The notes under the pieces are model-generated. The model was not told the origin of the DNA and did no database searches. It saw only the letters and a list, made by a program, of their open reading frames with translations. Below are positions 18,905 to 61,961 of a DNA stretch of 64,000 bases, in pieces. Where the stretch lies: IMG/VR virus record IMGVR_UViG_3300027759_006101, positions 294,270 through 358,269 of that record; one strand, 5' to 3'. Positions within the stretch are counted from its first letter, which is position 1; each line of letters begins with the position of its first letter. The position numbers and the translations under genes are program-made.

Positions 18905-19126
18905 TTAGCAATCCTTTGCTATTACCGAATCATCTTCATTTGATGAATTTGGATCTAAATCCATATCTGTAGTCAAAGGAATTACCAATTCGTCCTTGAT
19001 AGCTACTACTTCATCTTTATTTTCTTTTTCATCCGCCCAGACTACCGAATTATCAACTTCTACTTCTTCGCCTTCTGCATTAGTAAAGTTTTCGATTTTG
19101 CCTGTTGCTCTCTTAATCATACTCAT
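18905..19126 (-). CDS. Small acidic hypothetical protein (73 aa)
   Basis: ATGA-coupled to dnaJ and 1 nt from the next gene; D/E-rich. Confidence 0.7.
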
Positions 19127-21243: not shown

Positions 21244-21307
21244 ACTCCACCTCACTGGTATGTTATGAGTTAGAGTCATTTTTGTTTTTTTGCTTGCTCT
21301 TTTAGAA

Positions 21308-43636: not shown

Positions 43637-43696
43637 CTTGATCCACCACTGTCAGAGATTACTTAAAATATTCTTATCCAGCAGCTCAATAACCTA

Positions 43697-44659
43697 TTAT
43701 ATTGAAAAATCAAACTGGAAAGGTAATGATTTTTGTACAGTTAATGGACAATGAATGTCAAAGTACATAAAACCATCAACATAATCAATGTTATTGTAAG
43801 TGCCTTGTCTATAAAAAGTATACGAGCCTGAGTAGACAGATATGTTATTAGTCGTGTCTTTTGACACAAAATATATATCTTCATAAGAAGCAACTTTAAC
43901 TGTGTCTAAACCATTTGGCAAATAAACTTTCAATTGTAAATTAGTTGACAAATCACCTGAAGACAATGCGCTTTCAAGTATTTGATTGCAAATTATTTTG
44001 AAATAAATTGTTTTAGAATCTGGACCATTTCCTGAATTATAGTAGTCAATGTCATCTGCAGTAGAATTATCATTTACAACAGATGGCACAGTAGATATAA
44101 TAGGATTTCCCTGTCTAATTGGCCTCGGTGTAGAAAATTCTGCATCATCGAAAATACCGATTGAGAATTCTGGCATTTTTGAAGTTTCATCTATCAGAAA
44201 TGGATTTGTTATATTAAATGCTTCAAAGCTTTTAGATTTAAATTGTCTGTCAAAATTTTCATTCTTATATAATTTTATAGAATGATATCCTTCTGAAAGA
44301 GCAACTATAATTTTACTTGAAGAATCAAAGCTAAAACTTGTATTGATGAAATCAAGAACATAGATACCATCTCCAGCAGTGAAGCGTAAGTAATCTTTTT
44401 CAATATCAAAAATTGACTCTACTTTTAATTCAAAAGTAATAAATTGTAAATATTTAGCTGCTTTTGTAAAATTGATTTCAAGTTTATCTAATTGAGAATT
44501 TATTGAAACTTCTGCATTTTTAAATAATTTGAAAGCAACAGTTTCAGAATTTTCACTTATGAGAAAATTTTTATCTGATGAAAAAAATTCTAATGAAAAA
44601 ATATTTTCATTATCTTGGATTTTTACTTGAGCTTTATTTTCTACTACACTTATGTTCAT
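43697..44659 (-). CDS. Hypothetical beta-rich protein in the virion block (320 aa)
   Basis: ATG 3 nt from the upstream stop; beta-strand pattern; no family recognised. Confidence 0.7.
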   Translation of the reverse strand: MNISVVENKAQVKIQDNENIFSLEFFSSDKNFLISENSETVAFKLFKNAEVSINSQLDKLEINFTKAAKYLQFITFELKVESIFDIEKDYLRFTAGDGIYVLDFINTSFSFDSSSKIIVALSEGYHSIKLYKNENFDRQFKSKSFEAFNITNPFLIDETSKMPEFSIGIFDDAEFSTPRPIRQGNPIISTVPSVVNDNSTADDIDYYNSGNGPDSKTIYFKIICNQILESALSSGDLSTNLQLKVYLPNGLDTVKVASYEDIYFVSKDTTNNISVYSGSYTFYRQGTYNNIDYVDGFMYFDIHCPLTVQKSLPFQFDFSI

Positions 44660-44662
44660 AAT

Positions 44663-47600: not shown

Positions 47601-48328
47601 AAAGATTCAATTTGTTCGTGAGATAAATTACCTTTTTGATTTAATGAGTTGTGATTTATATCAGGCAATCTGGCGGAATCTATTGTTCCAGTAGTGATTT
47701 TACTAGCATCAATATGCGAAATATTTTCAGAAGTTATTTGATTTTGAACTTCTGAAGAAAGATCGATAGGAGATGGATTGCCATTACCTCCTATGTGTTT
47801 ATGATTTTTTATAGAATACGACAAAGAAGAAAATAGAGTTATATCTTGTCGTGTAGATTCATCAAGAGATATAGAACCTAAGTTGATATCAATATCAAGA
47901 AATCCCAATAGTATATAATTTACAGAATCATTTATTTGCGTCAACGATGAAATAAAATCAACATCTCCCGATACAGCAGTTTGTTCATTTTCATATGCAT
48001 AAACAAAAATTCTAGTTGTTGAAGCATTTGTTGGGATAATAGGTAAACTTATATCTTTTGGGGATGTAGTTCTTGCAGCTTTATATGAGACAAAACCTTG
48101 ACCAGAGGTTATAGATAATTTTGAAAACTTAAAGTCATTAGAATAAGTTTGAATTCTCCAAGATGGAGTATTAGGATCTGATTCTATAATTCCATTTTTA
48201 AAAATTTGATACAGATTGTACATCTGATTTTCAATCGCTCTAAAACGCAATTCATCTAAATCAATGTTTTCTGACAGGTCTTGATTTGGTTCAATGTATC
48301 CAAATCCATATATTGGTGTATTTCCCAT
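44663..48328 (-). CDS. Tail/baseplate-associated protein with paralogous N-terminal domain and NHL-like C-terminal propeller (1221 aa)
   Basis: MGNTPIYGFGY...RFRAIENQ...ITSGQG...KNHKHIG...IDASKITTGTIDSARLP at the N-terminus. VICDTLNDRIVITD and LFHPKGLRI blades at the C-terminus. TAATG coupling. Confidence 0.78.
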   Translation of the reverse strand: MGNTPIYGFGYIEPNQDLSENIDLDELRFRAIENQMYNLYQIFKNGIIESDPNTPSWRIQTYSNDFKFSKLSITSGQGFVSYKAARTTSPKDISLPIIPTNASTTRIFVYAYENEQTAVSGDVDFISSLTQINDSVNYILLGFLDIDINLGSISLDESTRQDITLFSSLSYSIKNHKHIGGNGNPSPIDLSSEVQNQITSENISHIDASKITTGTIDSARLPDINHNSLNQKGNLSHEQIESLLLNYTSDSSSNTLSELSIANRLQMLIALKKQSGTGYSHIDSTQINTIVYVPGIFPNNNGNSSTGNSAGFAITTGAPSKYALATVYNNAPWASGNGISNSVSTSTFVSDKTYVTLTELNQARIIASSIGSTLYSYYNNVAIAGSATTGSFSIDTPINYRTLAVPSASIFSTTDSWSTGLIFTNSYDSNKLKVDTGLYAFKLFDSPVSLEYNSKIGIGFSAGLGETGAALGKIYMYLVVGTGASDPNLSTDEKIEFAPNTGTATTSIYISPVTNKKIFDDETYGSSGSTATYQSFNLSDFGDNSLIKSVLGYGFYFATDQGWTADKQVKFELLTPSESQINPDNNLDNLIESRRSALGTTSSLFTWNDLYTYKNANFLFRFDSGDVTTQYNQVSYEVDLPSGTKYTLKSRTNTSSEVFYNVRTVNESDVITVTPNTNSSVGRYFDLLFSVYSNENQNLTPTFSNIRVNYSAVGTATSRIYDRNLTDTSINKFGWVSDAYSVKNIGYGTTNPDNTNYLSIYDTSKVGNWVYLRNNTLISATNLRVETTVEDGIDNSTLAGYLTPVQIFNKSTSYGFNTPKDYQALNNGGNVICDTLNDRIVITDINGNFTKVIQGNIRLRLQSRDFVALSATFNPVTRKIFIAFSQNISFEDLTKIFIVYDNITVRADDTRLTTEYVEPISGNSSTFVINIQNTVEGRTLSSALANSSLRKIRLDRGSFTNSGPSINSTDILSATIPQSTVSDINRTQQFYAGISTSFSGTVTTAIGISSTSQTVSSVTDYNGDGEVSLTKMYGPNNQEDDIQLDLLKGPIYYKNIYNPLSVQYVENDNHIVLSQPHSDSVLSLVDNDDLDLNWAITSDIVKYYDNKVGSAYQMGSNKVLLGSPAVDSNDTGKLQVYNITNGFIETKLTFNNDVVKALPGPSTDYSNFYVLTDDVISFGANSRLHLVNTSGTILATWGDNNELFHPKGLRIAGNDTILISE

Positions 48329-48570
48329 TATCTTTTTTCTCTTGGTTTATATTCTGCTGTAACTTTTTGTAGTCCCCAGTTAGAATATCCCCATCGCAGT
48401 ACATCTTCAGTTTGTAAGGTGTCTGTATTTGTAAGATTGACCATTTGCATTTGTTGTGCGACAGGGCTTCTTAAAGAAACGTTGTTGCTCTCAACTGCGT
48501 CTTTGAATCTAATTTGCTCTGAAATAATAAAAGATAGGGAATTGAAAGATGCCATAATACTAAATATCAT
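48328..48570 (-). CDS. Small hypothetical protein (75-80 aa)
   Basis: Bridges the hub-like and 1221-aa genes with overlapping start/stop; contains RWGYSNWG. The start could be the second ATG (48555). Confidence 0.6.
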   Translation of the reverse strand: MIFSIMASFNSLSFIISEQIRFKDAVESNNVSLRSPVAQQMQMVNLTNTDTLQTEDVLRWGYSNWGLQKVTAEYKPREKR

Positions 48571-51484
48571 TTATAAGGAATGGGATGTTAATTCCTGTAA
48601 CATTTGCTGTAATAACATTTTGAGATTTATCAAAGACATAATTTATTCTCTCATAAATATATTTATCAGTATAATCGACTGTCTTGGGATCTACTACAAA
48701 CACTTGAATTACAAATGTTCCGTGAAATTTTAAAGGCTTTGTTACATAACAACTAAATGAGACTTCGCTTTGAGGAGTTGCAATAACTTTTTCTAATTCA
48801 TCAGTAATTCTCTCTAAAGTTCTTTGGTCTGGAATAGTATTTCTTTGTTCAGATGAAACTTTATATTTTCTAAATCCTATGTAAGGTTTTGCAAATGGAT
48901 TTTGTTCTACATTTAATAAATCTTTTTTAGCTGAGAGTTTATCAAGAAGTGTTTCACCCAAATAATCTCTTGGATCTGCAGGGTAAAATCCTGGGTTATA
49001 TCTTTCGTCTGCTAAAAAGCCAGTAATAGATGATGCAAAAGCTTTTACACCAGCAGCTAATGATTTCATATCAGTAGATATTGTAAATGAATCTGTTATA
49101 AGTCCGTGCCAACCTGGGTCACTTAAAGGAACATTCTGATTGACTAATGCATTCTGATTATAATTGATTATAGATACATTAGCTGCTGGATCTGAAACTA
49201 TACCAGTAAACCTCAAGTCGTTATCAATAGTGTCATCTCTGTATCTTCCGGATAAGACAAATCCAAAGTTTTCAGCCCACCTCATTACTGGAAGCCCACC
49301 AACTCTATTTAATCTTTCTAAAATAGATTTTATTTTTGGATAAATAGTCTGAGTAGGAGAACATTTTATTAAATCTTGGTTATTGACCGACTGCGAGTTT
49401 AATCTTAAATCAATGTCTCTTATGTTAGTATTGTCTCTATAGTAATATGACCAAAATCCAGAAGCAGCAATTAAACTATCAATTGCAAAATCGTGTCTCA
49501 TACCAGCAATAATCATATTTTTTTCAAAATAAATATTATCCAAAGTATATGACATAATGTCAACACAAGTAAGCGTAAATGTGCTGTCAGAACCTGTTCT
49601 TTGATATTCTACGTTTGTTATAAATCCTTGAAAATAACAATATCCAGGACCATTTAAGTAACCTGCATCTATAGTTATGCAAATCAAATTATTTTCTATA
49701 GCATTTATAACTTTATATCCTTTGAGGGAAGTATCTAGATTTTTTAAAGTTACAGTTGCTGTCTTCTTAATTATGCAGCTATTTCCACCATCATTTTGAC
49801 AACTTACATTCCAAGTAAGCAAAAACTCAGATATATCAGCTACTGGAATAAAAAGATCTTGAACTGGTGGATTTATAAAACCATACCCTGATTCAGCATT
49901 ACTTTTACCGCTTATATTCTTGAATGTAGTGCTACTTTCAGCACTGCGGTTAGGACTAGCTGCCAAAACTCCGGGATGTGGCATCTCTACCTGTAAAAAT
50001 GCTGGTCCTTCAATTGTTGTGTTATAAAATAGCTTAAATACATAATCATATCTCGGAAAATTTTTCTCTTTACTGTTTCTTTGTTTAGTTTCTATAAACT
50101 GAGAATTAAATTGAGCATTAGAGAGTCTATGGTCTGCATAGTAAGATATATTTTTATCTAAAGGATTTTTATCTTTATGAAATCCTGTATTTCCAGGGGT
50201 TGGGTTAATTCTGTAAGATGCAGCTTCAAAAGAAGTGACAATATCTTCTAGTGTGTCAATGTTTGCTAAATTTTGTGGCAATATAAATTGAGATATAATT
50301 TGATTATTAGTAAATTCATCCTGATCGTTATTAAAATTATTAAAAATAATTGCTGAATATCTAAACTTTAGGTTTAAGTTCGAAACTCCTAAAGATATTT
50401 TTGTACTAGGAGGACACCAACATTCTCTTGAGTCAGATGGAACTATTGAATTCCATTTTGTAATATCAGAAGTAAATCCTATGAGTACAACTGGGCCAAC
50501 AAAATGCACAAAAATATCATATGAATGCATATTATTTTTGTCAAATATTGGAGCTTCTGAAGTTGTTATTACTTTATAGTCTGAAATTGAAGGATCATAA
50601 AACTTAATTATTGGCTTTTTGTCTATTTTGAATTGTATTTCAAAGTCATTATAATATCTATCGTCTGGAACTACTGGAGCAAAATAAACTGAGAGTGCGG
50701 AATCACTTTGATTAACATTGCTTGCAGAAAAATTGATATGAAAACCATTGCCTCCATTATCTCCTCTAGCATTGATAGGATAATCATTTCCATCAGGATT
50801 AAATATTCTTGCTTCTTTTTGATATACAGCGTCAAAAGAAGTGGCAAATATTCTTTCGACATAGGTAATTTGATCGATAGAACTTATTTCAACTGATGAA
50901 CCACCATTAGGATCATTTATAGTTTTCAAAGTACCTGAGTTAGTATTTTGTTTGTAAGGGCCAATGTATTTTATAGCTTGGGTGCCACTATTTACAATAT
51001 TCCAAATATTGTATGTTGTTAACACATTGCCTTTGTCGCTAAAAGGAATCTGTGGAAGATGTAATGCTTTTGAAGAACTTATTTTTTTTGTTCTTTTTGT
51101 TGATGTTACTCTTGGATCATCAACAAACTCAACATTGTATGCGGGGCCTTTGAGTTTATTGAAATTTGGATGAACTTCATTTGGTACGATTCCACCAAAT
51201 GCAAAAGTACAGGATGAGGCACTTACGGATGTATTTACTTCAGGAATTCTAGCGCTTTGCAATGAGTTTAATTTCTGTAATCTAGAACTAAACTTTTTCT
51301 CCACAATACCGTCAGGATTTGTATACAAAGGCTCAAAATCGTAATTTAAGACATTGGTGTTTTCTGCAGGCTTAGCTTGAGACGTTGCAGAGTATTCGCC
51401 CGTGAAAAAACCACTTTCTGGAGCGTTTATAATCGAAAGTTTAATAGTAGAAACTAACTGTCTTGAGTCGGGAAGTAAATTCAT
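48560..51484 (-). CDS. Putative tail hub/baseplate-type protein (974 aa)
   Basis: C-terminal half has the hub/late-control-like pattern ATVTLKN...ITIDAGY...FQGFITNVEYQR...FTLTCVD. Confidence 0.55.
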   Translation of the reverse strand: MNLLPDSRQLVSTIKLSIINAPESGFFTGEYSATSQAKPAENTNVLNYDFEPLYTNPDGIVEKKFSSRLQKLNSLQSARIPEVNTSVSASSCTFAFGGIVPNEVHPNFNKLKGPAYNVEFVDDPRVTSTKRTKKISSSKALHLPQIPFSDKGNVLTTYNIWNIVNSGTQAIKYIGPYKQNTNSGTLKTINDPNGGSSVEISSIDQITYVERIFATSFDAVYQKEARIFNPDGNDYPINARGDNGGNGFHINFSASNVNQSDSALSVYFAPVVPDDRYYNDFEIQFKIDKKPIIKFYDPSISDYKVITTSEAPIFDKNNMHSYDIFVHFVGPVVLIGFTSDITKWNSIVPSDSRECWCPPSTKISLGVSNLNLKFRYSAIIFNNFNNDQDEFTNNQIISQFILPQNLANIDTLEDIVTSFEAASYRINPTPGNTGFHKDKNPLDKNISYYADHRLSNAQFNSQFIETKQRNSKEKNFPRYDYVFKLFYNTTIEGPAFLQVEMPHPGVLAASPNRSAESSTTFKNISGKSNAESGYGFINPPVQDLFIPVADISEFLLTWNVSCQNDGGNSCIIKKTATVTLKNLDTSLKGYKVINAIENNLICITIDAGYLNGPGYCYFQGFITNVEYQRTGSDSTFTLTCVDIMSYTLDNIYFEKNMIIAGMRHDFAIDSLIAASGFWSYYYRDNTNIRDIDLRLNSQSVNNQDLIKCSPTQTIYPKIKSILERLNRVGGLPVMRWAENFGFVLSGRYRDDTIDNDLRFTGIVSDPAANVSIINYNQNALVNQNVPLSDPGWHGLITDSFTISTDMKSLAAGVKAFASSITGFLADERYNPGFYPADPRDYLGETLLDKLSAKKDLLNVEQNPFAKPYIGFRKYKVSSEQRNTIPDQRTLERITDELEKVIATPQSEVSFSCYVTKPLKFHGTFVIQVFVVDPKTVDYTDKYIYERINYVFDKSQNVITANVTGINIPFLINDI

Positions 51485-51521: not shown

Positions 51522-54500
51522 TTATTGTGCAGACTGCTCAGTTGGATACACTGTCAGAACGTCAGGATTTGGATACCCTCCAGTTCTGACAAATGTAAAA
51601 GTATTAGTTGATGGTTTAGCAGATGAAGCAATCAGCAATGAATGAAATCCTCCAGCAGAAATATCAGTTGGATTTGCAATATCGACAACCGAAGATATTT
51701 CACCGGGAAATCTTCCATTTTTTGAGTTTTCAGATAAAGTATCTTTATAACTTGATGCAAAGCCTAATTCACCATCTAAATTAACACCCCAAGGCCAATA
51801 ATAATTTTCTGACAAAGCCAAATATCCGAAGTTACTCACAGATATTTTTTGAAAAGTTTCTGCTTTAGGATCGCCTGGTAAAAAGTTTTGGTTTTCTGCT
51901 GCTGTCCCAGGACTTATCAAGAAAGCTGGAATTTCATTTGCGTTTGTGAATCCATAGAAGTATATTGCTCTGTTGAAATAAGGGTCAGTATCAGCCAATA
52001 ATACTCCAATCCTGTTCTCATATGTTGATATATCATACGCATAACCCCATCCTCTCAAATTAGTTTTTCCAGCAAACCAAACAATTTGGTTGTCCGGATC
52101 GAATGCGATACCAGTAACATAGCCTATAAAATCGTTTGGGCTAGTTGGATCGAAAAATCCTATTTCTATTTTGAACGGCATCATAGGAGTTGTCAAAAAT
52201 AAATCAGGGTTTTGTCGGACATCAATACCAATAAATCCAATTTCATTTACAAATCCAGTTGAAGAATAATTATGTTTTCCGGCAACCCATACTTTTTTAT
52301 TATCAGCAAAAGCAGTAATATGTTGGCAGGTTGAAACATCTAAAAGTGCATCATTGTTTGAAAAATTAAGAGGACTATTAGATAAATTTCTTTCTAGAAT
52401 TGATTTAAATCCATATATGTTACTCTTAGGTAATGCTTGCCCGAAAGTCCCCAAATTATTATCGCCACAAACTAGCAAGACTTTTTTATTCAATACAGTA
52501 TCTTCAACAATAATTGCTGAAGTTCTATCTCCTGCTGATACTTTGACTACCTTGAATTTAGAATTTAATGGAATTTTTGTCAAAACATTTACTTTGCTTA
52601 TATTGCTCGGCAAACCCAATTGTCCATAAGTATTGTCGCCACTTCCATATAGTGTGCCAAGATCATCAACTGCAAATGAATGTTTCAATCCTGATTCAAT
52701 TATGACGTACTTTTTAGTATCATCTACTAACTCGTAACCATATCTGTTAGGTTCATAAGCTCCACTTGCAATTGCTCCATTAATTGACTGTCCAGTAGTA
52801 AACAACTTGTTTGCATCAACTTTGGGAACTGGAGAAACATTTACTGGCACATTTAATCTTCTACCTAAATTTGTCAGCAATGAAGATTTTAAATTCTGAG
52901 TGTCTGCTACTACTAATGAAACAAGGAACAACCCTACTGTATTAAATGAGTAAGATAATTGTGAAGCAGTTCTAACTAAAACACCATCTAAATACCACTC
53001 AAAAGTGATGTTATTTAAGTCTTCTGGATCATAAGAAAGTAAGCCATCAAACGTATAAGTATCTCCTACTTTAAGCTCAATATTACCTGATAATTCTGGC
53101 TCATTGCTTATCACAGCAATAGGGTTTTTATTTGGTGGTGGAGGTGGAGGAGTTCTAACAACAAATATTGTTTTATTTACTGGAATACTTTCTAATCCAA
53201 AATTGTCAAACACACTTAATGTCACAGTATGATTGCCTGTACTTGTGAAAATAAAAGAAATTTCTGGTGTGTTTAAATTTTGATTAATTCCATCCACTAA
53301 CCATTTGTAACCACTTATGAATTGATTAATATCAGAATCGTTACTACCATCCGATGTAAATGTGACGCTTGTATTAATTTCAACTTGTGTAATACCTGGA
53401 GGTACTGTATTCAAGACTGCAATTGGCTGATTGTTTCTAACTATATAACTTAATGTTTCAGTGCTTGATCCATCTTGATTGTCTATGACTTTTAGTGAAA
53501 CATTGTAAGTACCAGGCTGTGTGTATCTTGTTACAGCAATTTGTTCAAAAGAAGTCTGTCCATTACCAAAATCCCAGTAATAAGCTAATGGACCACCTAT
53601 ATTGTCAGGATCATAACTGCCTGCTCCTGAAAAAGTAACATCTAATGGTGCAAAACTTGTATTTGACACAGGGTTAGCTGTTATTCGAGCAACTGGAGGC
53701 TGATTAGGAGGATTTACCTTGACAGCAACAGTTACAGTATTGCTCCAAAAACCATCATTATCCCTTACTCTATGAGAAACTGTGTATGGTACAAATCTTG
53801 GCGTATTAAACGTGTAAATGAAAGATTTTGTAGTTATTGGGGTAATTTGCAAACCAGATATTGTCCACTCATAATCAGATATACTTCCATCTAAATCAAA
53901 CGCTAGTGAATCGAAAATGACTGTGAATGGAGCAAATCCTGTAATTACTTTATTTACGTCTGTCGGATTTGTAGAAATAACTGCCACAGGTATTCTGTTG
54001 CTGACAAAAATGTTTTTTGTAATGGAATTTGATAAATTGAATTTATCATAAACTGTCAATGTAACTGAATAAGTTTTATTGCCGAAAGCATACTGGTGTT
54101 GTGGAGATTTTTTGTTAGCATCAGAAGTTACAAAACTATTTTGATCTCCAAAATTCCACTCCCATCTTACTAAATCATTTTCTGGATCAGTAGATGAATC
54201 TATAAAATTAATTGTTTGTAATGTTTGTGGATTTGTAGGGTTGAATGAAAAATTTGCGCTTGGAGGTTGATTTATAATTGTGATTTGCTGATTACTTGGT
54301 AAACTTCTTCCATTTCTATTATCAGTGACTACCAAACTTGCATTATAAATACCAACACTTTTGTAAATATGAGATATGTTTGCTGGATTCACAAATGAAG
54401 TTGTATTTCCATCTCCAAAATCTATTTCGTAAAAAGTGATAAACCCATCTGGATCTTTTGAACTTGCAACATCAAAATTAAACAAATCATTTACTAAGCC

Positions 54501-57500
54501 AGTGTTTTTATCAACCAATAAAATAGCATTTGGTAAAATATTGTCTGCAGGACTAACATTGACTACAACCTGTGTTGAATTACTATCACCAAAATCATCA
54601 GTAACAGTCAAAGTTACAGTATATGAACCTTCTGACGTAAATTGAAATGTTGGATTCTGTAAACTTGATACTTGCCCATTACTTACAACCCAAGCATAAG
54701 ATACTATATTTCCGTCTTCATCAAAAGAATTTTGTCCAGAGAATAATAAGGAACCTGGTGCCTTTACAATTAATGAAGTGTATGAAATTCTTGCAGTTGG
54801 TTTTCTATTATTTACTGTTAGTGTTTTTTGGCTAATGTTACTAGCACCAAAATTATCTATGACTTCAAGTGAAATTGTATATAAACCAGGCCTATTATAA
54901 ATATGACTTACATTAGGAGATGCATTATCTTGTCTTACAGTATCACCGAAATCCCAATTGTAACTTACTATAGTACCGTCAGAATCAAAAGATTTTGATC
55001 CATCAAAATTTGCTGATTCTTTAGAATTTATTGGATTAGGAGAAATTGTAAATATAGAATTAGGCAAAGAATTATTAACAATAATATCAAAAGTAGCAGT
55101 GTTGCTTAAGCCATTATTGTCAGTAACCGTAAGCTTTACTGTATATAATCCAGATTTTGTAAAAACATAACTTATTGTTTTTCTGTAATTTTGCAAGTTA
55201 AATTCTACGAAAGAATTATTTTCAAGTTCCCAAAGCCACTTTACAATAAATCCATCTGTATCTGTAGATGTATCAGTGAAATTTACTGCAAGCGGAGCAA
55301 AATTGTTATTATTATCAACAGTAAAAGAAGCTTGTGGAGGTTTGTTAGCTGGAGGAGCAAAAACTTCTATCTGTAAAGATTTCTGTGAAGATTTCTTATT
55401 TGTTCCATCAAAAAGTCCGTTATCTGTCACTGTCAAAGTTACATCATAAACTCCAGGCGAAACATACTGATGGGTTGGATTTTTGCTTAGGGATGATGTG
55501 GTTGAATAAATATCAGAACCATCTCCAAAATTCCATTCCCATTTAATAATATATCCATCAATATCTGAGGATTCTTCTGTGAACTTTACAATAATTGGTT
55601 CAAAACTTGTTTGGGTTGCATTAATAAGGTTTATTACTGGAGGTTGGTTGGTTATTTCAGATACAGTAATGGTCTTGACTTCAATATCTGTATTTCCGAA
55701 ACTATCTGTAACTTCAAGTGAAACTGTGTAACTACCAAATGTGGAGTAATTGAACACTGGGTTTTGAATATTAGAAGTCAATGACAAATTATTAGCATCA
55801 AATAACCACTTCCAATTTACTATTTGTCCTTCTGACGTATCAAGAAAATTAACAGTATATGTTTTATCAACTTGTGAATATGAAAAGTTTGCTATTGGAT
55901 TATTATTTCCTTGACCTGACACAGATACACTATAATTTATAGAATTAGTATCATTAGAACTATTAGTAACCGTAAGTTTAACATCGTATACACCTGGTAA
56001 ATCATAAAAATGTTCTGGATTTTGAGAGTATGAAGTTTGTCCATCACCAAAATCCCAAGCCCAAGACGTAACTATATTTGCTGGAGTAGATTTATCAGTG
56101 AACTTTACATTAAATACGGGACCAAAAGATGTTTGTTTCCAAGAAAAATCTGCTTTTGGTGTTAATGATACTACAATGTTAGGGCCTGTAAATAAATCAC
56201 TCTTTCTACTAAAATTATCTTCAACATAAAGTGTTGGTTTATAAGTACCAGAAATTGTGTAATCGTATATCAAGTCATCATTATTTGAAAAACTTGATAA
56301 CTGACCATTTCCTAAAAAATCCCAAACATAAGTAGCTATTACAGATCCATCTTTTACGGGAAAAGATTGGTTTGTGAAAAGGACACTAAGTGTTGCTGGT
56401 CCAGATGTAGGACTAGCGCTAAACTTTGCTGTGGGTTTTAAGTCAGTTACTTTTGGATAAACTGTAATTTTCAAAGTTGTTGGATTAGACTTTACTCCAT
56501 TACTGTTTGTAACTATCAATGTGACAGTAAATTCTTTATCAACATTTGTAGAGTTTACAAAAGTATGAGTTGGATTTGTTTCTATTGAACTAGTGCCATC
56601 ACCAAAGTCCCATTCATAAGTTAATTCACTTCCAGAAAAATCAAATGAATCATTAGAAAAAACTACAAATAAATCAGTAATTCCAGAAGTTGGATTTGCG
56701 GTAAATAAAGCTTGAGGTTTTATATTATTAGTGTCTGTTGTCACGTCAGCTGAAGAGACGCATTCTATTGGGTAATCAACATATGTACAAGCTATTCCAG
56801 TTATATTATCAAATGTGTTAGAATACGGGTTGAATTTAACAGCTCTTAGGTTACAATTACCAGTATCGTAAACAACAATTACATCACTAGAGTAATTCAT
56901 ATGTTTGCAGCTTATTATTGCAGGTTTATGTTTTGAAACTACACTTGAAAGTTCTGAGTTTGAATCATAGTAAGTAACCATACTTTCTCTTTGAATCAAA
57001 TTAACTGCGAAGTCAGAATTTACATTACCAGCTATCAAATGTAATTTTGGAATTACTGAAGTGCCAAAACTGCTCGAAGATACAGGGACTTCATAATAAA
57101 CTATTGAGCCACTACTAAAGAATACGTTTCTTTGAACATTTAAGCGATTATCGTAAACTGATGTCAACCCAAAAATATTACTTTCTTCCGATAAAGTTTG
57201 GCCAGAAATATCATCAAGATTTATTAATTCAAATTTATCAGAAAGCTCGTAATTAGAAATAAATTTACCATTGATTATTCGCAAATTTTCTTTTAGAACG
57301 TAAGAAACTAAATACTCCTGTGAGTTTATAATTGAAACAGTAGGGTGAACAGGAGCAGCTATGCCTTCGAGCATTAGTGTGTCTAGAAGTCTAAATTCAG
57401 ATATGTATGTTGGAGCTTTACCAGCTACTAGAATATTTTGGTCAGTAACTGGAGCAACAGTTCCGCTTGTATTAAGTGGAATTGTTCTAAAAATTACAGA

Positions 57501-60500
57501 ACCATCATCTGCATAGCCAATGTTAGCAAGTAATGGAGACTCATTTGATATAGCATAAGAATTAAATCTCATTTTATTGAAAGCTATAGAATTTGTAGAA
57601 AAATTTGCATCACTTTTTGATTCTCCAAATATGTGTGGGAACCAAGAAAACTTATTTCTCATATTAGTGTTTGAACTAATCAGAGAATTATAATTATTTG
57701 TGCTTTGAGATTTTAATAAACTTGTATGTTCTGTCAGTAAAAATGTATGGACATTTCTTGAATTTTTAATTAATTCTGACGAAAGTAAAAAGGGATATTC
57801 GCCTGGTAAAGAAACCCCATTCCCACTTTGAACATTAGGATACCCAACACAATAATTTTCATAAACTCCAGAGTAAAATGAGTCGGTCTGAATGATAGAT
57901 GTATATTTTATATCTTTTTCTTTAGTTGTTGGTACAGTGTAAGCAATCACAATAGAATTTTCAAAACCTGATTCACAAGCTGTTATATCAGTAGCTAATT
58001 CTTTTCCGCCCTTAAATGAAGCTCTTTCTCTTTTTGCTTGTGATAAGTTTCTAGTTGAACTCTTGAAAGATTCTGGATTTGCAAATTGTTTTGATTTCTC
58101 TAACTGAATAAAGTGATCAATTTTATTTTTACCAAATGGAGTTTCTGTTTGATAAAAGCCAAAATCATTAGATTCTGATGAACCTGCCGCTGCTCCAGTA
58201 GATGTTTCAATCAAATTAGCTTTTCTAATGTTATCGTCTGTACTCTTTTGCGGAGGTAAAATTAATCCATTAGCTAGTCCACGAGCTATAATTCCACCAC
58301 GTAAATGCAATACAGAAGTTTGCTGAGTGCCATCTGAATTTTTAAGCGAAGTGTTTCCGAAAAGATCAGGTAAACCTGGCGGAAAATTTCCATTTATTCT
58401 ATGAAATATTGTTTGCGCAAGAAGAGTCTTGAGTTCATTAAAGCTTATATCAATTGCTTTGACATATGAGGTACCACTACCGCTATTTTTTCCGCTTGGT
58501 AATGCTAAAATTCCACCGCCATAAACCCAAGTTGCGTAACCAGTGTCAGAATTTAAATATTCAGGATCTAAGTCTATTGTGTAAATCCTGTCTCCAGTAA
58601 TTGGATCTGTCGGATATGACTTTAATATTTTTTGAGCTAACCATCCAGGATGTCTTACTACTTTAGACGATGGATTATTAACGTTGAGCCACTGCGGGGC
58701 TACATATTCATCTATTTTGTTTATATCATCACAAAGTCCAGAAATTGATTTAGGAAATAACTGCCAATTGTTTAATCTTGAGGACTTTGTTAATTGCCAT
58801 TCAATATCTCCTTCTTCCTCGTCTCTGCTGTCAGTGTTCTGTTGCCAAAATCTTCTTGTGAAATATTGAGTTTCTGTAGGTATTTCAGTCGTATTTGCAT
58901 TTTCAGAAACTGTAAATTTTGTTTTAGATTCGAAAGTGTTATTATTTCCAGAGTAAACAAAATTAGAAAGAGAATTTATTCTTTGAAGCTTAACATTCTT
59001 AAGTTCTAATAAATCATTATCAACTTGAAGTTTAGTAATTCTACTCACTCCATAATAAGGTCCATTACTAGCTTCATCTTCTGGATAGTCATCAATTGCG
59101 TTAACTTCATTTTCTGATGGATCTTTTGAAAGTATATTTGTATTTAGTATTGTATTTTTTGGAAACGTAAATTCAACCAGCCTTGGATCCTTAACAGTTA
59201 TGATTGGAGCATTTGGGTTGAATACAGTTTCTATACCATTTATAGTTGGAGGTATGCCATCATAATTTGGTTCTGAATTTTTATCAAGCTTAGAATATTC
59301 AATATTCCCTCTATACTTATTTTCTTCTACCTTATCAATAGAAGAAAATTTTAAGACAATTGATGCAAATCTATCATCACTCCTTGAAAAAGTAAGTTTT
59401 ATTGAACTGCCTACTGGAAATTGTAAATTTGAGTTTGCATCATTTGGCACTTCTATTGAAAAATAAGAAGTTTCTTCTGCTTGTGAATTTACGTACTGAA
59501 TTATTTTGTATGTTTTTTTAATTTTTAACGTAGAATTTTCGATCTCCACTGAATCATAGGGATTGTTCAAGAATACAGCATTATGCTCAACTTTGATAAT
59601 TTGATTACCATCTACAAAAAGACCAGTTGTTTTTGATAAATTACCTGTAATGTCAGGAAAGCCTGGATTATAATCATAAATTTCAAATTCTTCGGGATAT
59701 TTGCCATCTTTGTCTTTGAGCAAAATACCATCAACAGTATTGTCTTTCGTTAAATCATTTTGAACTTTATAAAAATAAATCTCTTTGAAATAATCTGGAA
59801 TGATATTAATTCTTTTTCCTGTGTCGTCATATGTGTATCCATCAGCAGCAATAAATGGCTTAGCAAGTTTTATTTTTCCGTTAGCAATTCTGGGTCTTCC
59901 AAAAATGTAATTTGTTCCTACACCAGATTTTGGAAAAGCTGAAGTATTTACATCAAAATAATCTACATTTTTAGAAACGGGATCGGTAAGATAAATGACT
60001 CCTGAATCTTGAATTATTTTTTTAATTTCACCAGTAATCCAAATGTTAGATTCACTTCCATCAATAGGCCCAGTGAATAAAAAATTATCTTTCGGTTTGT
60101 TTTCAGCTGCCAATAAACCAAGAGGGCTTAAACTAACAGGTTTTGATGTTGTATATGCATTGAGTCTAGGATATGGTGAATCCTGATTATCAACATTGTC
60201 ATTTTTATTATCAGGATTGCACAAATCAACTATAATATTTTGAAATTTATTTGTACTTGATCTTATCTTCCAATACTTAGTATCTTCTGTCTGACTATTG
60301 TTTGATTTTGTAAAACCTTTTGACGTTTCCGTAATATTAATCAAACTGTTTTGCAAATCATTATTTAACGAACGAACTTCAAGGTTTAAATATCTATAAC
60401 CTGATAAATTTTGATCACCATAGTAATGAGGTTCACCCTGATCACCTACATAATTTCTCGTGTTTCCTTCACCAGGAATAATATATTCTTTATCCTGTTT

Positions 60501-61961
60501 TAAGGTCATTGCATTGAACTTCCATCCTCTTAAGGGAATAGGAATAGATGCACTCCCACTCGGCAGTTCATCTTCACCAATTGTAAGTTCTTGATTTAAA
60601 AAATTAATATTTTCACAACCATCAGCGCCACGAATATATTTATCAGGATAGTCCATATTATCTGTTGGACTTTCCAAATCATCAAAAATTTCATTAGAAT
60701 GAATACCATCAATCATTCCATAAATCCATCTTTGAGTATTATCAAATCTAAGGTTTTTTGAATCAGATTCGGCTTGAGGTAAATCTTGTATTGCATCTAA
60801 AAAACCAGAATATCTTTGATAATCTTGAGACGCACTAATGTTCCCGCTGTTAGTTTCAACAGTCAAGAATTGAGCTTGATTGTAAGTGATAGTTTTGTAT
60901 CTCTTTGGGATATAAATACTACCAAAACCAACTAAATAAGCTTTAAGTGGATTTGTGTGATTTTTGTTCCAATCATATACATTTGCATCAAATGTAACTG
61001 TCCTCGTTGGGTCCGTAATCAAATTTATTCTTGCTTCAGCTTTTCCTCTTATTTCCTTAACATACGTTGAGTTTGGATCTGTGTAACCTTTTATAGAAAA
61101 GTTTTCTGTATCTACTGTTACTAAAGAAGTTTTTGCTTGTGAATTTGATTTAAGATCAGGAGTAGTACCATAAATGCTTACATATCCACTATTACCTGAA
61201 TTAGCAGTATAGGCTGTGATTTTTTTTCCAGCACTATATGAAATTCTTCTGGCTAAAGTAAAGTTAAGTGTTTGAAATCTACTGAACTTATTGACTTTGC
61301 CTTTCGAATCAATTGCAGTAATTTCAATTCCAACTCTGCTTGAAGTATTAGGCTTGATCATTTCAAACCAATTTAATGTTGTGTATCTAGGAAACTGTCT
61401 GACAGTGTCTTTGTTTAAATCTTTAATTACAACAATTTCATCATCACCACAACCTGATGCTGAAGGTTTTGTTTTTATTTCAGATGGCAAAAATTCATCA
61501 ATTCCAACATATTCTTCAAGTGGTGTACCAAAATATACTGTGCCTTCAATAGAGCCTGAAAAAGATTTTAGAGTTTTTGTAGCTACATTTTTATCAAAAT
61601 CAACTAATTCCAAAACAAAACTATCAGAAATATTTACAGCATTTAGACCTTGGCTGATTCCAGCTATAAATTGAAAATTTAGCTTAATTTTGTATTTTTT
61701 GGAACTTTCTACATATTCGGGTTCCAAAAAAACTGTATCTCTTCCAAATGTATTTGATACTGTTAAGTTTGGTTCTCCTACCCTGCAAACAAAACTACAA
61801 TCAGTAGAACTAAAAACAACTTCAGCATTTGTAGGATACGACTTTACAAATATTGGAAATGAAAAATTCTTAATTGGATTGCCCAAAAGCACTTCATAGT
61901 TAAACTTGAATTTGCCAATAAAACTAGTTGTTCTTGATCTATTTGTTCGATAAATGGCCAT
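51522..61961 (-). CDS. Giant tail-tip/fibre protein with 14 tandem PKD domains and a C-terminal RCC1-like propeller (3479 aa)
   Basis: About 1740-aa unique N-terminal part, then 14 repeats carrying P.A.F/I...F.D.S.D.DG.I..W.WDFGDG...H.Y...G.Y.V.L.V.D. C-terminal HSFAVDDLGTLYGSGDNTYGQLG, VSAGDRTS, GVNLDGELG, ISAGGFHSL (RCC1/BLIP-II). No signal peptide. Confidence 0.88.
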   Translation of the reverse strand: MAIYRTNRSRTTSFIGKFKFNYEVLLGNPIKNFSFPIFVKSYPTNAEVVFSSTDCSFVCRVGEPNLTVSNTFGRDTVFLEPEYVESSKKYKIKLNFQFIAGISQGLNAVNISDSFVLELVDFDKNVATKTLKSFSGSIEGTVYFGTPLEEYVGIDEFLPSEIKTKPSASGCGDDEIVVIKDLNKDTVRQFPRYTTLNWFEMIKPNTSSRVGIEITAIDSKGKVNKFSRFQTLNFTLARRISYSAGKKITAYTANSGNSGYVSIYGTTPDLKSNSQAKTSLVTVDTENFSIKGYTDPNSTYVKEIRGKAEARINLITDPTRTVTFDANVYDWNKNHTNPLKAYLVGFGSIYIPKRYKTITYNQAQFLTVETNSGNISASQDYQRYSGFLDAIQDLPQAESDSKNLRFDNTQRWIYGMIDGIHSNEIFDDLESPTDNMDYPDKYIRGADGCENINFLNQELTIGEDELPSGSASIPIPLRGWKFNAMTLKQDKEYIIPGEGNTRNYVGDQGEPHYYGDQNLSGYRYLNLEVRSLNNDLQNSLINITETSKGFTKSNNSQTEDTKYWKIRSSTNKFQNIIVDLCNPDNKNDNVDNQDSPYPRLNAYTTSKPVSLSPLGLLAAENKPKDNFLFTGPIDGSESNIWITGEIKKIIQDSGVIYLTDPVSKNVDYFDVNTSAFPKSGVGTNYIFGRPRIANGKIKLAKPFIAADGYTYDDTGKRINIIPDYFKEIYFYKVQNDLTKDNTVDGILLKDKDGKYPEEFEIYDYNPGFPDITGNLSKTTGLFVDGNQIIKVEHNAVFLNNPYDSVEIENSTLKIKKTYKIIQYVNSQAEETSYFSIEVPNDANSNLQFPVGSSIKLTFSRSDDRFASIVLKFSSIDKVEENKYRGNIEYSKLDKNSEPNYDGIPPTINGIETVFNPNAPIITVKDPRLVEFTFPKNTILNTNILSKDPSENEVNAIDDYPEDEASNGPYYGVSRITKLQVDNDLLELKNVKLQRINSLSNFVYSGNNNTFESKTKFTVSENANTTEIPTETQYFTRRFWQQNTDSRDEEEGDIEWQLTKSSRLNNWQLFPKSISGLCDDINKIDEYVAPQWLNVNNPSSKVVRHPGWLAQKILKSYPTDPITGDRIYTIDLDPEYLNSDTGYATWVYGGGILALPSGKNSGSGTSYVKAIDISFNELKTLLAQTIFHRINGNFPPGLPDLFGNTSLKNSDGTQQTSVLHLRGGIIARGLANGLILPPQKSTDDNIRKANLIETSTGAAAGSSESNDFGFYQTETPFGKNKIDHFIQLEKSKQFANPESFKSSTRNLSQAKRERASFKGGKELATDITACESGFENSIVIAYTVPTTKEKDIKYTSIIQTDSFYSGVYENYCVGYPNVQSGNGVSLPGEYPFLLSSELIKNSRNVHTFLLTEHTSLLKSQSTNNYNSLISSNTNMRNKFSWFPHIFGESKSDANFSTNSIAFNKMRFNSYAISNESPLLANIGYADDGSVIFRTIPLNTSGTVAPVTDQNILVAGKAPTYISEFRLLDTLMLEGIAAPVHPTVSIINSQEYLVSYVLKENLRIINGKFISNYELSDKFELINLDDISGQTLSEESNIFGLTSVYDNRLNVQRNVFFSSGSIVYYEVPVSSSSFGTSVIPKLHLIAGNVNSDFAVNLIQRESMVTYYDSNSELSSVVSKHKPAIISCKHMNYSSDVIVVYDTGNCNLRAVKFNPYSNTFDNITGIACTYVDYPIECVSSADVTTDTNNIKPQALFTANPTSGITDLFVVFSNDSFDFSGSELTYEWDFGDGTSSIETNPTHTFVNSTNVDKEFTVTLIVTNSNGVKSNPTTLKITVYPKVTDLKPTAKFSASPTSGPATLSVLFTNQSFPVKDGSVIATYVWDFLGNGQLSSFSNNDDLIYDYTISGTYKPTLYVEDNFSRKSDLFTGPNIVVSLTPKADFSWKQTSFGPVFNVKFTDKSTPANIVTSWAWDFGDGQTSYSQNPEHFYDLPGVYDVKLTVTNSSNDTNSINYSVSVSGQGNNNPIANFSYSQVDKTYTVNFLDTSEGQIVNWKWLFDANNLSLTSNIQNPVFNYSTFGSYTVSLEVTDSFGNTDIEVKTITVSEITNQPPVINLINATQTSFEPIIVKFTEESSDIDGYIIKWEWNFGDGSDIYSTTSSLSKNPTHQYVSPGVYDVTLTVTDNGLFDGTNKKSSQKSLQIEVFAPPANKPPQASFTVDNNNNFAPLAVNFTDTSTDTDGFIVKWLWELENNSFVEFNLQNYRKTISYVFTKSGLYTVKLTVTDNNGLSNTATFDIIVNNSLPNSIFTISPNPINSKESANFDGSKSFDSDGTIVSYNWDFGDTVRQDNASPNVSHIYNRPGLYTISLEVIDNFGASNISQKTLTVNNRKPTARISYTSLIVKAPGSLLFSGQNSFDEDGNIVSYAWVVSNGQVSSLQNPTFQFTSEGSYTVTLTVTDDFGDSNSTQVVVNVSPADNILPNAILLVDKNTGLVNDLFNFDVASSKDPDGFITFYEIDFGDGNTTSFVNPANISHIYKSVGIYNASLVVTDNRNGRSLPSNQQITIINQPPSANFSFNPTNPQTLQTINFIDSSTDPENDLVRWEWNFGDQNSFVTSDANKKSPQHQYAFGNKTYSVTLTVYDKFNLSNSITKNIFVSNRIPVAVISTNPTDVNKVITGFAPFTVIFDSLAFDLDGSISDYEWTISGLQITPITTKSFIYTFNTPRFVPYTVSHRVRDNDGFWSNTVTVAVKVNPPNQPPVARITANPVSNTSFAPLDVTFSGAGSYDPDNIGGPLAYYWDFGNGQTSFEQIAVTRYTQPGTYNVSLKVIDNQDGSSTETLSYIVRNNQPIAVLNTVPPGITQVEINTSVTFTSDGSNDSDINQFISGYKWLVDGINQNLNTPEISFIFTSTGNHTVTLSVFDNFGLESIPVNKTIFVVRTPPPPPPNKNPIAVISNEPELSGNIELKVGDTYTFDGLLSYDPEDLNNITFEWYLDGVLVRTASQLSYSFNTVGLFLVSLVVADTQNLKSSLLTNLGRRLNVPVNVSPVPKVDANKLFTTGQSINGAIASGAYEPNRYGYELVDDTKKYVIIESGLKHSFAVDDLGTLYGSGDNTYGQLGLPSNISKVNVLTKIPLNSKFKVVKVSAGDRTSAIIVEDTVLNKKVLLVCGDNNLGTFGQALPKSNIYGFKSILERNLSNSPLNFSNNDALLDVSTCQHITAFADNKKVWVAGKHNYSSTGFVNEIGFIGIDVRQNPDLFLTTPMMPFKIEIGFFDPTSPNDFIGYVTGIAFDPDNQIVWFAGKTNLRGWGYAYDISTYENRIGVLLADTDPYFNRAIYFYGFTNANEIPAFLISPGTAAENQNFLPGDPKAETFQKISVSNFGYLALSENYYWPWGVNLDGELGFASSYKDTLSENSKNGRFPGEISSVVDIANPTDISAGGFHSLLIASSAKPSTNTFTFVRTGGYPNPDVLTVYPTEQSAQ
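52870..56725 (-). repeat. Array of 14 PKD (Ig-like) protein repeats
   Basis: Counted by eye from KPQALFTANP (near 56720) to NKNPIAVISN...VADTQNLKSS (near 52880). The repeats are diverged at nucleotide level. Confidence 0.85.

What the first reader, a model, noticed from the sequence alone, without database searches (positions are those of the whole stretch)
51522..56725. 3479-aa protein ending in 14 tandem PKD domains capped by an RCC1-like propeller
Seen: a contiguous array of 14 diverged PKD repeats, a poly-Pro hinge (RTPPPPPPNKNP) before the last, then an RCC1/BLIP-II propeller. There is no export signal or cell-wall anchor. Known: long PKD arrays are typical of archaeal and bacterial surface proteins and form extended rods, while phage Ig-like domains usually occur in 1-3 copies. 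Inference: a monomeric beads-on-a-string tail appendage (tens of nm if about 4 nm per domain) presenting a propeller adhesin, which would be an unusual receptor-search device for penetrating thick capsules or S-layers.
Basis: partly seen in the sequence, partly recalled or inferred. Interest (0 to 1): 0.65.

Follow-up and report, generated by a model that had tools for sequence, protein, structure and literature searches.

The report
Giant phage tail adhesin on tether
A 3,479-residue protein of an uncultivated ~360-kb lake phage is a conserved tail-end protein that already ends in a lectin-like propeller and has gained a string of 14 PKD domains and a second, RCC1-type propeller. It is an extreme but recognisable form of phage adhesin fibre.

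Summary
ORF 51522..61961 (-) encodes 3,479 aa. It holds exactly 14 diverged PKD repeats (aa 1759-3047), a Pro-rich linker before the last repeat, and a C-terminal seven-bladed RCC1-like propeller (AF2 pLDDT 86.6; Foldseek to human RCC1, E 1e-17). There is no signal peptide or anchor.

New points:
- **Source.** The contig is an IMG/VR virus record of 358 kb from lake water.
- **Core.** The unannotated N-terminal 1,750 aa is a conserved core. Part of it is homologous to the last tail gene, just before the lysis genes, of ~34-kb siphophage-like contigs.
- **Second propeller.** The core ends in a six-bladed sialidase/fucose-lectin-like propeller (aa 1321-1733, Z 25) that lacks sialidase motifs.
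- **Add-on.** Positional orthologues in related large phages (1,210 and 1,401 aa) stop after that propeller. The PKD array plus RCC1 propeller is therefore a clade-specific extension.
- **Fixed count.** About 70 metagenomic clusters carry the protein. The 14 repeats are positionally orthologous and their number is almost invariant down to 40% identity. The exceptions are one three-repeat deletion and one clade with 11 repeats and no propeller.

Best reading: a distal-tail protein carrying a roughly 50-60 nm tether with an adhesin tip. Virion location, oligomeric state and host remain untested. I rate it a new variant of a known kind.

The parts
51522..61961 (-). Whole gene: 3,479 aa, 385.6 kDa, no signal peptide
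   Evidence: The start codon lies 3 nt after the stop of the upstream gene, and the N-terminus is conserved in 40 orthologues.
60603..61961 (-). aa 1-453: N-terminal region, the least conserved part (mean pairwise identity 0.41); fold unknown
   Evidence: No Pfam, PHROG, PDB or Atlas match.
60159..60602 (-). aa 454-601: conserved region I, shared with a 999-aa siphophage-like tail-end protein and with the 1,210-aa orthologue
   Evidence: BLASTP E 6e-17 to P0095 and E 1e-14 to P0093.
59088..60158 (-). aa 602-958: insertion relative to the shorter homologues, in which regions I and II adjoin
   Evidence: alignment coordinates; mean pairwise identity 0.50.
58113..59087 (-). aa 959-1283: module A, the most conserved domain (0.69); unannotated; AF2 confidence low
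   Evidence: Profile search hits of E 5e-69 and weaker to proteins of ~960-1030 aa; BLASTP E 4e-42 to P0095; alignment A5; pLDDT below 50 over much of it.
56763..58001 (-). aa 1321-1733: six-bladed beta-propeller, sialidase / fucose-lectin-like fold. It is the C-terminal domain in PKD-less orthologues.
   Evidence: AF2 pLDDT 75-95. VIA Z 25, rmsd about 3 A over about 285 residues to GH33 sialidases and AAL/RSL lectins. Foldseek hits to PLL/PHL lectins at E 1e-8. Atlas PLL-like propellers. No Asp-box, RIP motif or conserved Arg triad.
52821..56687 (-). aa 1759-3047: 14 tandem PKD domains
   Evidence: The repeats are positionally orthologous across the family. Each repeat is 0.61-0.71 conserved.
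53121..53156 (-). aa 2936-2947: Pro-rich linker between PKD13 and PKD14
   Evidence: A Pro-rich linker is present in all 56 full-length relatives.
51525..52814 (-). aa 3050-3479: seven-bladed RCC1-like beta-propeller. The distal half (0.56) is less conserved than the first half (0.67).
61965..63998 (-). Upstream neighbour: C-terminal half of a ~1,300-aa Asn/Lys/Ile-rich low-complexity protein. Its N-terminal half lies at the other end of the virus record.
   Evidence: No family hit.
48560..51484 (-). Downstream neighbour, 974 aa. Conserved in all relatives, including the PKD-less ones. Weak baseplate-hub hit.
   Evidence: phrog_196 E 3e-4. Orthologues at 30-49% identity. No PDB match to its profile.
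39284..48570 (-). Rest of the conserved synteny block: genes of 80 aa, 1,221 aa, 320 aa and 1,450 aa (the last with an Ig-like domain)

Best explanation
The protein is a structural protein of the distal tail (tail tip or baseplate periphery) of an uncultivated freshwater jumbo phage.

Its first ~1,730 residues are the ancestral protein. They comprise an anchoring and assembly part (regions I and II, shared with the last tail gene of small siphophage-like phages) followed by a six-bladed lectin-like propeller. That propeller is the C-terminal head in shorter orthologues.

The ancestor of this clade appended 14 PKD domains and a seven-bladed RCC1-like propeller. I infer that the PKD string is an extended tether of roughly 50-60 nm that holds the RCC1-like propeller away from the tail for first, reversible contact with the host surface. 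The inner propeller would then be available for a second, close-range contact.

Shown here: the domain architecture, the homology, the synteny, the add-on nature of the extension and the conservation of its domain count. Inferred: virion location, extension length, binding function and the order of binding.
For: 1. Viral origin. The source is an IMG/VR record of 358,269 bp with CheckV completeness 89%. No relative was found in 185,579 species-representative genomes. Eight further IMG/VR contigs carry the gene.

2. Tail link. A profile of aa 560-1755 finds proteins of ~960-1030 aa (E down to 5e-69). One of them, P0095, lies after genes matching Neck1 (E 1.5e-5), tail terminator (E 8e-5) and major tail protein (E 2e-3), and after a 708-aa protein with tape-measure-like features. 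A 60-aa ORF and a CHAP endolysin follow it directly. BLASTP of P0001 against P0095 gives E 4e-42 and E 6e-17.

3. Add-on. P0093 (1,210 aa) and P0109 (1,401 aa) occupy the same position before orthologues of the 974-, 80-, 1,221-, 320- and 1,450-aa genes, at 30-53% identity. Both end after the six-bladed propeller.

4. Neighbours are adhesin-like or tail-like: a weak baseplate-hub hit, tail-fibre and Ig PHROGs at E 1e-48 in the 2,856-aa protein, and PA14 in the 1,791-aa protein.

5. The tip is the modular part. One clade replaces PKD13-14 plus the propeller with a Thr/Gly-rich tail. The distal half of the RCC1 propeller is less conserved (0.56) than the PKD domains (0.61-0.71).

6. RCC1-type propellers occur in phage proteins annotated as tail fibre or Ig-like.

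7. There is no export signal.
Against: - No virion proteomics or imaging exists for this phage.
- Pfam models for sheath, T4 tube, Baseplate_J, gp25, terminase, HK97 capsid and T4 portal find nothing in the record. Tail morphology is therefore unknown.
- The hub hit of the neighbour is weak (E 3e-4) and its profile matches no solved structure.
- The PHROG hits that place P0095 in a tail module are also weak (E 1e-5 to 2e-3).
- The N-terminal 450 aa, where fibres usually dock, is the least conserved part.
- Every PKD repeat is individually conserved and positionally orthologous. That is more than a passive spacer needs.
- The oligomeric state is unknown.
Confidence: 0.6

Rival explanations
1. 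The PKD array is itself the working part. It would be a multivalent, weakly glycan-binding strip, Hoc-like in the sense of the 'adherence to mucus' model. It would keep the virion on polysaccharide-rich particles, sheaths or host capsules, with each repeat tuned for a ligand. The propeller would be only one of 15 binding units.
For: Each of the 14 repeats is conserved at 0.61-0.71 and is positionally orthologous over the whole family. The count is almost invariant. PKD domains are among the commonest Ig-like domains of experimentally adherent gut phages, and T4 Hoc carries two of them (PMC13370021).
Against: No ligand is known. The conservation could equally reflect folding and inter-domain packing. 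The propeller is retained in about 60 of 70 clusters. This reading is not exclusive of the best explanation.
Confidence: 0.2
2. The six-bladed propeller is an active glycosidase (sialidase-like depolymerase). The protein would then be an enzyme-bearing tail spike that digests capsule, with the PKD-propeller arm targeting it.
For: The best structural matches include many GH33 sialidases (Z 22-25) and phage phi92 endosialidase (Z 17.8). The ~1000-aa homologue P0095 has a sub-threshold BNR_2 hit.
Against: There is no Asp-box, no RIP motif and no Arg conserved across the deeper alignment. Non-catalytic six-bladed fucose lectins (AAL, RSL, SapL1) and PLL-type lectins score equally well. Sequence identity to all matches is 4-10%.
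Confidence: 0.1
3. It is a head or neck decoration fibre (Hoc-, whisker- or head-fibre-like), not a tail protein.
For: Ig-like strings on phages are best known from capsid decoration proteins. Several PHROG hits of neighbouring giant proteins are labelled 'head decoration'.
Against: Those PHROG hits are to one shared Ig-like domain that is equally labelled 'tail fiber'. The core's homologues sit at the end of a tail module, next to the lysis genes. The protein has no similarity to Hoc-type capsid-binding domains in PHROGs or Pfam.
Confidence: 0.07
4. It is not a virion protein. It would be released at lysis or act inside or on the infected cell, or the contig would be cellular.
For: No hallmark virion genes were recognised by Pfam in the record. 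The window encodes a signal peptidase and other proteases.
Against: IMG/VR and CheckV call the record viral. There is no relative in species-representative cellular genomes. The protein has no signal peptide. It has homologues in small phage tail modules.
Confidence: 0.03

Closest known systems
T4 Hoc and the modular Ig-like/PKD adhesins of gut phages (PMC10385173; PMC13370021)
   Same: Strings of PKD/Ig-like domains are displayed on a virion without a secretion signal and are thought to bind glycans. Hoc carries two PKD domains plus one Ig-like domain on a binding domain.
   Different: Hoc has three Ig-like domains on a small capsid-binding domain. Here 14 PKD domains hang from a 1,750-aa tail-type core and end in a propeller. 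There is no sequence relationship outside the PKD fold.
RCC1-repeat proteins of tailed phages in BFVD (uncultured Caudovirales A0A6J5KT19 and A0A6J5KKT8; Pseudomonas phage Littlefix 'tail fiber protein'; Salmonella phage PVP-SE1 gp40; E. coli phage ECP26 'Ig-like domain protein')
   Same: An RCC1-type seven-bladed propeller sits in phage proteins of 600-1,400 aa, some annotated as tail fibre or carrying Ig-like domains (Foldseek E 1e-16 to 4e-9).
   Different: Identity is 11-14% and tblastn finds no match in 50,697 phage records. None was shown here to have a long PKD array.
Six-bladed propeller lectins and sialidases (AAL, RSL, SapL1, PLL/PHL; GH33; phage phi92 endosialidase)
   Same: They share the fold of aa 1321-1733 (Z 18-25). 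A propeller at the end of a phage receptor-binding protein is a known arrangement; the staphylococcal phage phi11/80alpha RBP 'platform' is an example from my own knowledge.
   Different: No catalytic or Asp-box motifs are present. Identity is 4-10%. In this family the propeller is internal and is followed by 1,750 further residues.
Long PKD arrays of bacterial and archaeal surface proteins
   Different: Those proteins are secreted and anchored. This one has no signal or anchor, is viral and has no relative in species-representative cellular genomes.

Membership tests
PKD domain (Pfam PF00801 / PF18911) | Match to the family HMM above the gathering score; unit of about 85 aa with the W-x-F-G-D-G core | tested here: met
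   PKD_4 scores 487.8 bits (cut-off 27) and PKD 336.4 bits (cut-off 23.5). There are 14 units of 82-97 aa. The motif is visible in the repeat alignment.
RCC1-like domain (PF00415 / PF13540 / PF25390) | Sequence match to RCC1 repeats above the curated cut-off | tested here: met
   RCC1 scores 42.8 bits (cut-off 21.7) and RCC1_2 29.9 (cut-off 22). The whole-domain model WD40_RLD scores only 73.9 against 150.
RCC1-like domain (PF00415 / PF13540 / PF25390) | Seven-bladed propeller fold | tested here: met
   AF2 pLDDT 86.6. The top 20 PDB matches are all RCC1/RLD proteins, with E 1e-17 to 5e-14 and TM by target 0.50-0.72, most at 0.61 or above. The blade count was read from 26 strands in DSSP, not from coordinates.
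BLIP-II | Closest structural relative among RCC1-like propellers | tested here: not met
BLIP-II is not among the 50 best Foldseek PDB matches.
Phage tail fibre / receptor-binding protein | Encoded in the tail module, after the tail tube and tape-measure genes | tested here: inconclusive
   This holds for the small-phage homologue P0095 (weak E-values). In the jumbo phage the block is conserved, but only a weak hub hit and domain-level tail-fibre PHROGs mark it as tail.
Phage tail fibre / receptor-binding protein | Conserved proximal part with an exchangeable distal part | tested here: met
   The core is shared with PKD-less orthologues and with small-phage proteins. The C-terminus is in turn a six-bladed propeller only, 11 PKD plus a Thr/Gly tail, or 14 PKD plus an RCC1 propeller.
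Phage tail fibre / receptor-binding protein | Present in virions; binds a host receptor; usually a homotrimer | not testable with these tools
   The trimer prediction of module A returned no verdict. No proteomics is available.
GH33 sialidase | Six-bladed propeller with Asp-boxes, an R-I-P motif, an Arg triad and a Tyr/Glu nucleophile pair | tested here: not met
   The fold is met (Z 25). There are no Asp-box or RIP motifs and no Arg conserved through the deep alignment.
Hoc-type capsid decoration protein | Small capsid-binding domain plus 3-4 Ig-like domains; PHROG or Pfam match | tested here: not met
   No PHROG family matches either half of the protein. The architecture is different.
Siphophage Dit / Tal or myophage hub and wedge families | Sequence match to the known distal-tail families | tested here: not met
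   There is no Pfam, PHROG or PDB match for aa 1-1755 or for its remote homologues. Structural similarity of aa 1-940 was not tested.

The most novel reading that the evidence does not exclude
The fixed number (14) and fixed identity of the PKD domains, kept over ~60% sequence divergence, would mean the array is a ruler-like, position-specific structure and not a loose string. One version is a two-stage 'cast and reel' device: a distal RCC1 propeller and a proximal lectin-like propeller are separated by a defined distance matched to the host envelope. Another version is an arm that packs along another tail component, such as the co-expanded ~1,300-aa low-complexity protein encoded just upstream. 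Module A would then define a new, unannotated family of distal-tail proteins shared by small siphophage-like and jumbo phages.
Probability: 0.15. Interest if true: 0.7.

Novelty: new variant of a known kind. Interest (0 to 1): 0.5.

Why it matters
- **Function for a dark protein.** It gives a testable function and domain map to a 385-kDa protein annotated only as 'PKD repeat protein'. The protein recurs in lake metagenomes of at least 14 studies.
- **Evolution by accretion.** It shows how a jumbo phage built a giant adsorption organelle: a small-phage tail-end protein, then a propeller head, then a PKD tether with a second propeller.
- **A new family.** It exposes a conserved distal-tail domain (module A) that no Pfam, PHROG or PDB entry covers.
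- **A clean comparison.** The near-invariant repeat number, set against natural variants with 0, 11 and 14 repeats, allows a direct test of whether fibre length matters for adsorption.

Tried and rejected
**Searches on the target protein that found nothing**
- PHROGs on both halves of the protein.
- PDB profile search and Atlas feature search of aa 1-1755.
- tblastn of the N-terminus, the core, the RCC1 propeller and P0095 against 50,697 phage records: no match. The PKD array matched only 4 records, none with a long array.
- Word-pattern scan of IMG/VR with the propeller alone.
- Paralogues of the core in the phage's own genome.
- Pfam and PHROGs on eight remote homologues: nothing except a sub-threshold BNR_2 hit.
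- Names for P0095 relatives: all 'hypothetical'.

**Attempts to identify the phage's tail and head genes**
- Pfam sheath (two models), T4 tube, Baseplate_J, gp25, Terminase_6N and 6C, HK97 capsid and T4 portal in the whole record: none found.
- PDB searches of the neighbours of 974 aa (alone and as a profile), 1,221 aa, 832 aa and 303 aa: nothing.

**Ideas tested and dropped**
- Homotrimer prediction of module A (complex prediction): 'no answer', score 0.00, the fold itself uncertain. This counts neither for nor against.
- Upstream ~1,300-aa protein as the tape measure: dropped. Its counterpart in L021 has only 339 aa and shares just the two ends. A different upstream protein in L024 has the hydrophobic and coiled-coil look of a tape measure.
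- Length of that upstream protein tracking the PKD number: not supported. Lengths are 1,290 aa with 11 PKD plus propeller, 1,184 aa with a full-length array, and 1,215 and 1,237 aa with 11 PKD.
- Repeat-number polymorphism in populations: the 'joints' in laid contigs all have sides of 20-29 letters, which the tool itself flags as unreliable. One contig from a 2025 run spans the whole 5.2 kb without an indel.
- The tree could not say whether the 11-PKD clade is a loss or an earlier state; the base is a polytomy.

**Other**
- Two paper searches for RCC1 in phage fibres gave nothing usable.

Full report
**The object**

The window's largest ORF runs from 61961 down to 51522 on the minus strand and encodes 3,479 residues, 385.6 kDa. 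The finding's coordinates cover its C-terminal half. The standard bacterial code was used throughout and the frame is open under it.

**Check of the observation**

Pfam reports PKD_4 (E 7e-150) and PKD (E 1e-102). It also reports RCC1 (42.8 bits, cut-off 21.7), RCC1_2, and a sub-threshold whole-domain RLD match over aa 3050-3238.

An HMM grown from the protein's own repeats finds exactly 14 head-to-tail units, aa 1759-3047, and nothing significant elsewhere. The units are 14-49% identical to one another, mean 31%.

The hexaproline stretch lies between units 13 and 14.

AlphaFold2 on aa 2960-3479 with 64 homologues gave pLDDT 86.6. The model shows one beta-sandwich followed by about 26 strands. 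All top PDB matches are RCC1-like domains: RCC1 at E 1e-17, then WBSCR16, HERC2 and RPGR.

No hydrophobic N-terminus or membrane segment exists.

**Where it comes from**

The window is the last 64 kb of an IMG/VR virus record of 358,269 bp, 34% G+C, CheckV completeness 89%. The window also encodes GyrB/GyrA, UvsW-like helicase, Hsp70, DnaJ, a tail-tube-like protein, and an S8, an S26 and a trypsin-like protease.

Thirty-one-mers of the finding's 5.2 kb are held at 70% or more by freshwater and lake metagenomes of at least 14 further studies, 2017-2025. This is a widespread lake phage.

A pattern scan of 185,579 species-representative bacterial and archaeal genomes found no relative.

Pfam models for sheath, tube, baseplate, terminase, capsid and portal find nothing in the record. 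The hallmark genes are too diverged for them, and the tail type is unknown.

**The family**

A word search with aa 1-1750 returned 73 clusters. All are metagenomic and are named at most 'PKD repeat protein'. About 50 of them measure 3,455-3,546 aa.

Counted with the same HMM, nearly all full-length members have 14 repeats, down to 40% identity in the core. Repeat i of one protein is most similar to repeat i of another. The array is therefore old and has not been homogenised.

The exceptions are informative:
- P0024 lacks repeats 3-5.
- One monophyletic clade (support 100) has 11 repeats and lacks repeats 13 and 14 and the propeller. It ends instead in a Thr/Gly/Pro-rich stretch and a short conserved C-terminal peptide.

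A contig from an independent 2025 run spans the whole stretch with 35 substitutions and no indel.

Mean pairwise identity over 56 full-length members:

| Region | Identity |
|---|---|
| N-terminal 450 aa | 0.41 |
| aa 602-958 | 0.50 |
| Module A | 0.69 |
| Inner propeller | 0.63 |
| Single PKD units | 0.61-0.71 |
| RCC1 propeller, first half | 0.67 |
| RCC1 propeller, second half | 0.56 |

The linker before unit 14 is Pro-rich in every member.

**The N-terminal 1,750 residues**

Pfam, PHROGs, a PDB profile search and the Atlas feature search give nothing.

A profile of aa 560-1755 run against 1.84 billion representatives found 77 proteins. Beyond the family itself there are three kinds:
- Proteins of ~960-1,030 aa that match aa ~957-1283 (module A).
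- Proteins of ~1,330-1,444 aa that match aa ~1310-1720 at their very end.
- P0093 (1,210 aa), which matches both.

None is a paralogue in this genome, and none has a Pfam or PHROG family.

Their contexts settle what they are. P0093 and P0109 are followed by clear orthologues of the window's 974-, 80-, 1,221-, 320- and 1,450-aa genes, at 30-53% identity. They are positional orthologues of the 3,479-aa protein, and they stop where its PKD array begins.

P0095 (999 aa) lies on ~34-kb contigs in this order:
1. Neck1-like, tail-terminator-like and major-tail-like genes.
2. Two small genes.
3. A 708-aa protein with the N-terminus and hydrophobic segments typical of tape measures.
4. A 762-aa protein.
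5. P0095.
6. A 60-aa ORF.
7. A CHAP endolysin.

That is the place of the last distal-tail or receptor-binding gene of a siphophage. P0095 aligns to aa 454-601 and aa 959-1283 of the target (E 6e-17 and 4e-42). It is 54% identical to P0093.

**A second propeller**

AlphaFold2 on aa 940-1740, with 59 sequences including the remote ones, was poor for module A (pLDDT below 50). It was good for aa ~1230-1740 (pLDDT 75-95).

An exhaustive structural comparison places aa 1321-1733 with six-bladed propellers. GH33 sialidases and the fucose lectins AAL, RSL and SapL1 tie at Z 24-25, with rmsd about 3 A over about 285 residues. Phage phi92 endosialidase scores Z 17.8. Foldseek and the Atlas add PLL-type lectins.

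There are no Asp-boxes, no RIP motif and no arginine conserved through the deep alignment. I read it as a lectin-like or structural propeller, not a sialidase.

The ancestral protein thus already ended in a propeller head. The clade studied here added 14 PKD domains and a second propeller of a different family.

**Mechanism**

Shown:
- The architecture.
- Its homology to tail-end proteins.
- The conserved gene block.
- The add-on nature and modular replacement of the C-terminal part.

Inferred:
- The core is built into the distal tail.
- The PKD string extends about 50-60 nm. This uses about 4 nm per Ig-like domain. Hoc's four domains span 18 nm according to the abstract of PMC10385173.
- The RCC1-like propeller makes the first contact.
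- The inner propeller makes a closer one.

What speaks against a merely passive spacer is that every PKD unit is individually conserved and the count is fixed. The array may have partners or ligands of its own; this is rival 1 and the novel case.

The claim 'monomeric' could not be tested. The single oligomer job returned no verdict.

**Comparison with what is known**

PKD and Ig-like strings on virions (Hoc, gut-phage modular adhesins; PMC13370021) and propeller heads on phage receptor-binding proteins are established kinds.

RCC1-type propellers occur in phage proteins annotated as tail fibre. Among 50,697 deposited phage records only four show any tblastn similarity to the array, and none has a long one.

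New here are the scale, the two different propellers in one chain, the strict conservation of 14 positionally distinct PKD units, and an unannotated distal-tail domain (module A) shared between small and jumbo phages. I therefore rate it a new variant of a known kind, of moderate interest.

**Limits**

- The PHROG evidence for the tail context of P0095 and for the hub-like neighbour is weak.
- The host is unknown.

Noticed in passing
window 61965-63998 (-) and the start of the virus record (G000 1-2009, -): Both ends of the 358-kb record lie inside one gene, a ~1,300-aa Asn/Lys/Ile-rich low-complexity protein. The record is therefore a nearly closed genome broken in this gene. Joining the ends directly does not restore one frame, so a short piece is missing. 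In relative L021 the protein at this position has 339 aa and shares only the first ~100 and last ~75 residues. The central ~1,000 aa is thus an expansion in the same lineage that gained the PKD array.
   Followed up: partly
proteins P0049, P0050, P0052, P0053, P0055, P0060-P0062 (e.g. L026 10001-18805): A monophyletic subfamily has 11 PKD repeats and no RCC1 propeller. It ends in a Thr/Gly/Pro-rich low-complexity stretch of 60-120 aa plus a conserved ~25-aa C-terminal peptide. That peptide may be a docking site for another protein or a glycosylated tip. No separate propeller gene lies next to it.
   Followed up: partly
window 20111-22309 (-): Three protease genes stand in a row directly after the block of giant genes: subtilase S8 (333 aa), signal peptidase S26-like (166 aa) and trypsin-like (223 aa). 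A phage-encoded signal peptidase is unusual. These enzymes might process the giant proteins.
   Followed up: no
window 14298-15992 (-) and 19123-20103 (-): Full-length Hsp70 (E 1e-159) and DnaJ (J domain, zinc-finger domain and C-terminal domain) are encoded by the phage. The Hsp70 is about 42% identical to those of the 480-735-kb 'uncultured phage' records LR7565xx.
   Followed up: no
window 22359-43636 (-) and 62-3892 (+): Further giant genes lie here: 2,856 aa (two Ig-like domains hitting tail-fibre and head-decoration PHROGs at E 1e-48), 1,791 aa (PA14 domain), 989 aa and 1,450 aa. A 1,942-aa ORF runs into the window's start and carries the same Ig-like domain. The phage devotes more than 45 kb to adhesin-like proteins.
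   Followed up: partly
window 13900-14301 (-): A MerC-like membrane protein (PF03203, E 1e-18) is encoded in a phage genome.
   Followed up: no
window 48328-48570 (-): An 80-aa ORF lies between the 974-aa and 1,221-aa genes. It is conserved as a 71-75-aa gene at the same place in every relative examined, including the PKD-less ones.
   Followed up: no
P0024 (L035 6001-15537): One lineage carries a clean deletion of PKD repeats 3-5 (3,178 aa) and is otherwise intact. This is a natural length variant of the tether.
   Followed up: partly
window 5096-9734 (+): The phage encodes complete GyrB and GyrA, the latter with the C-terminal beta-pinwheel repeats.
   Followed up: no
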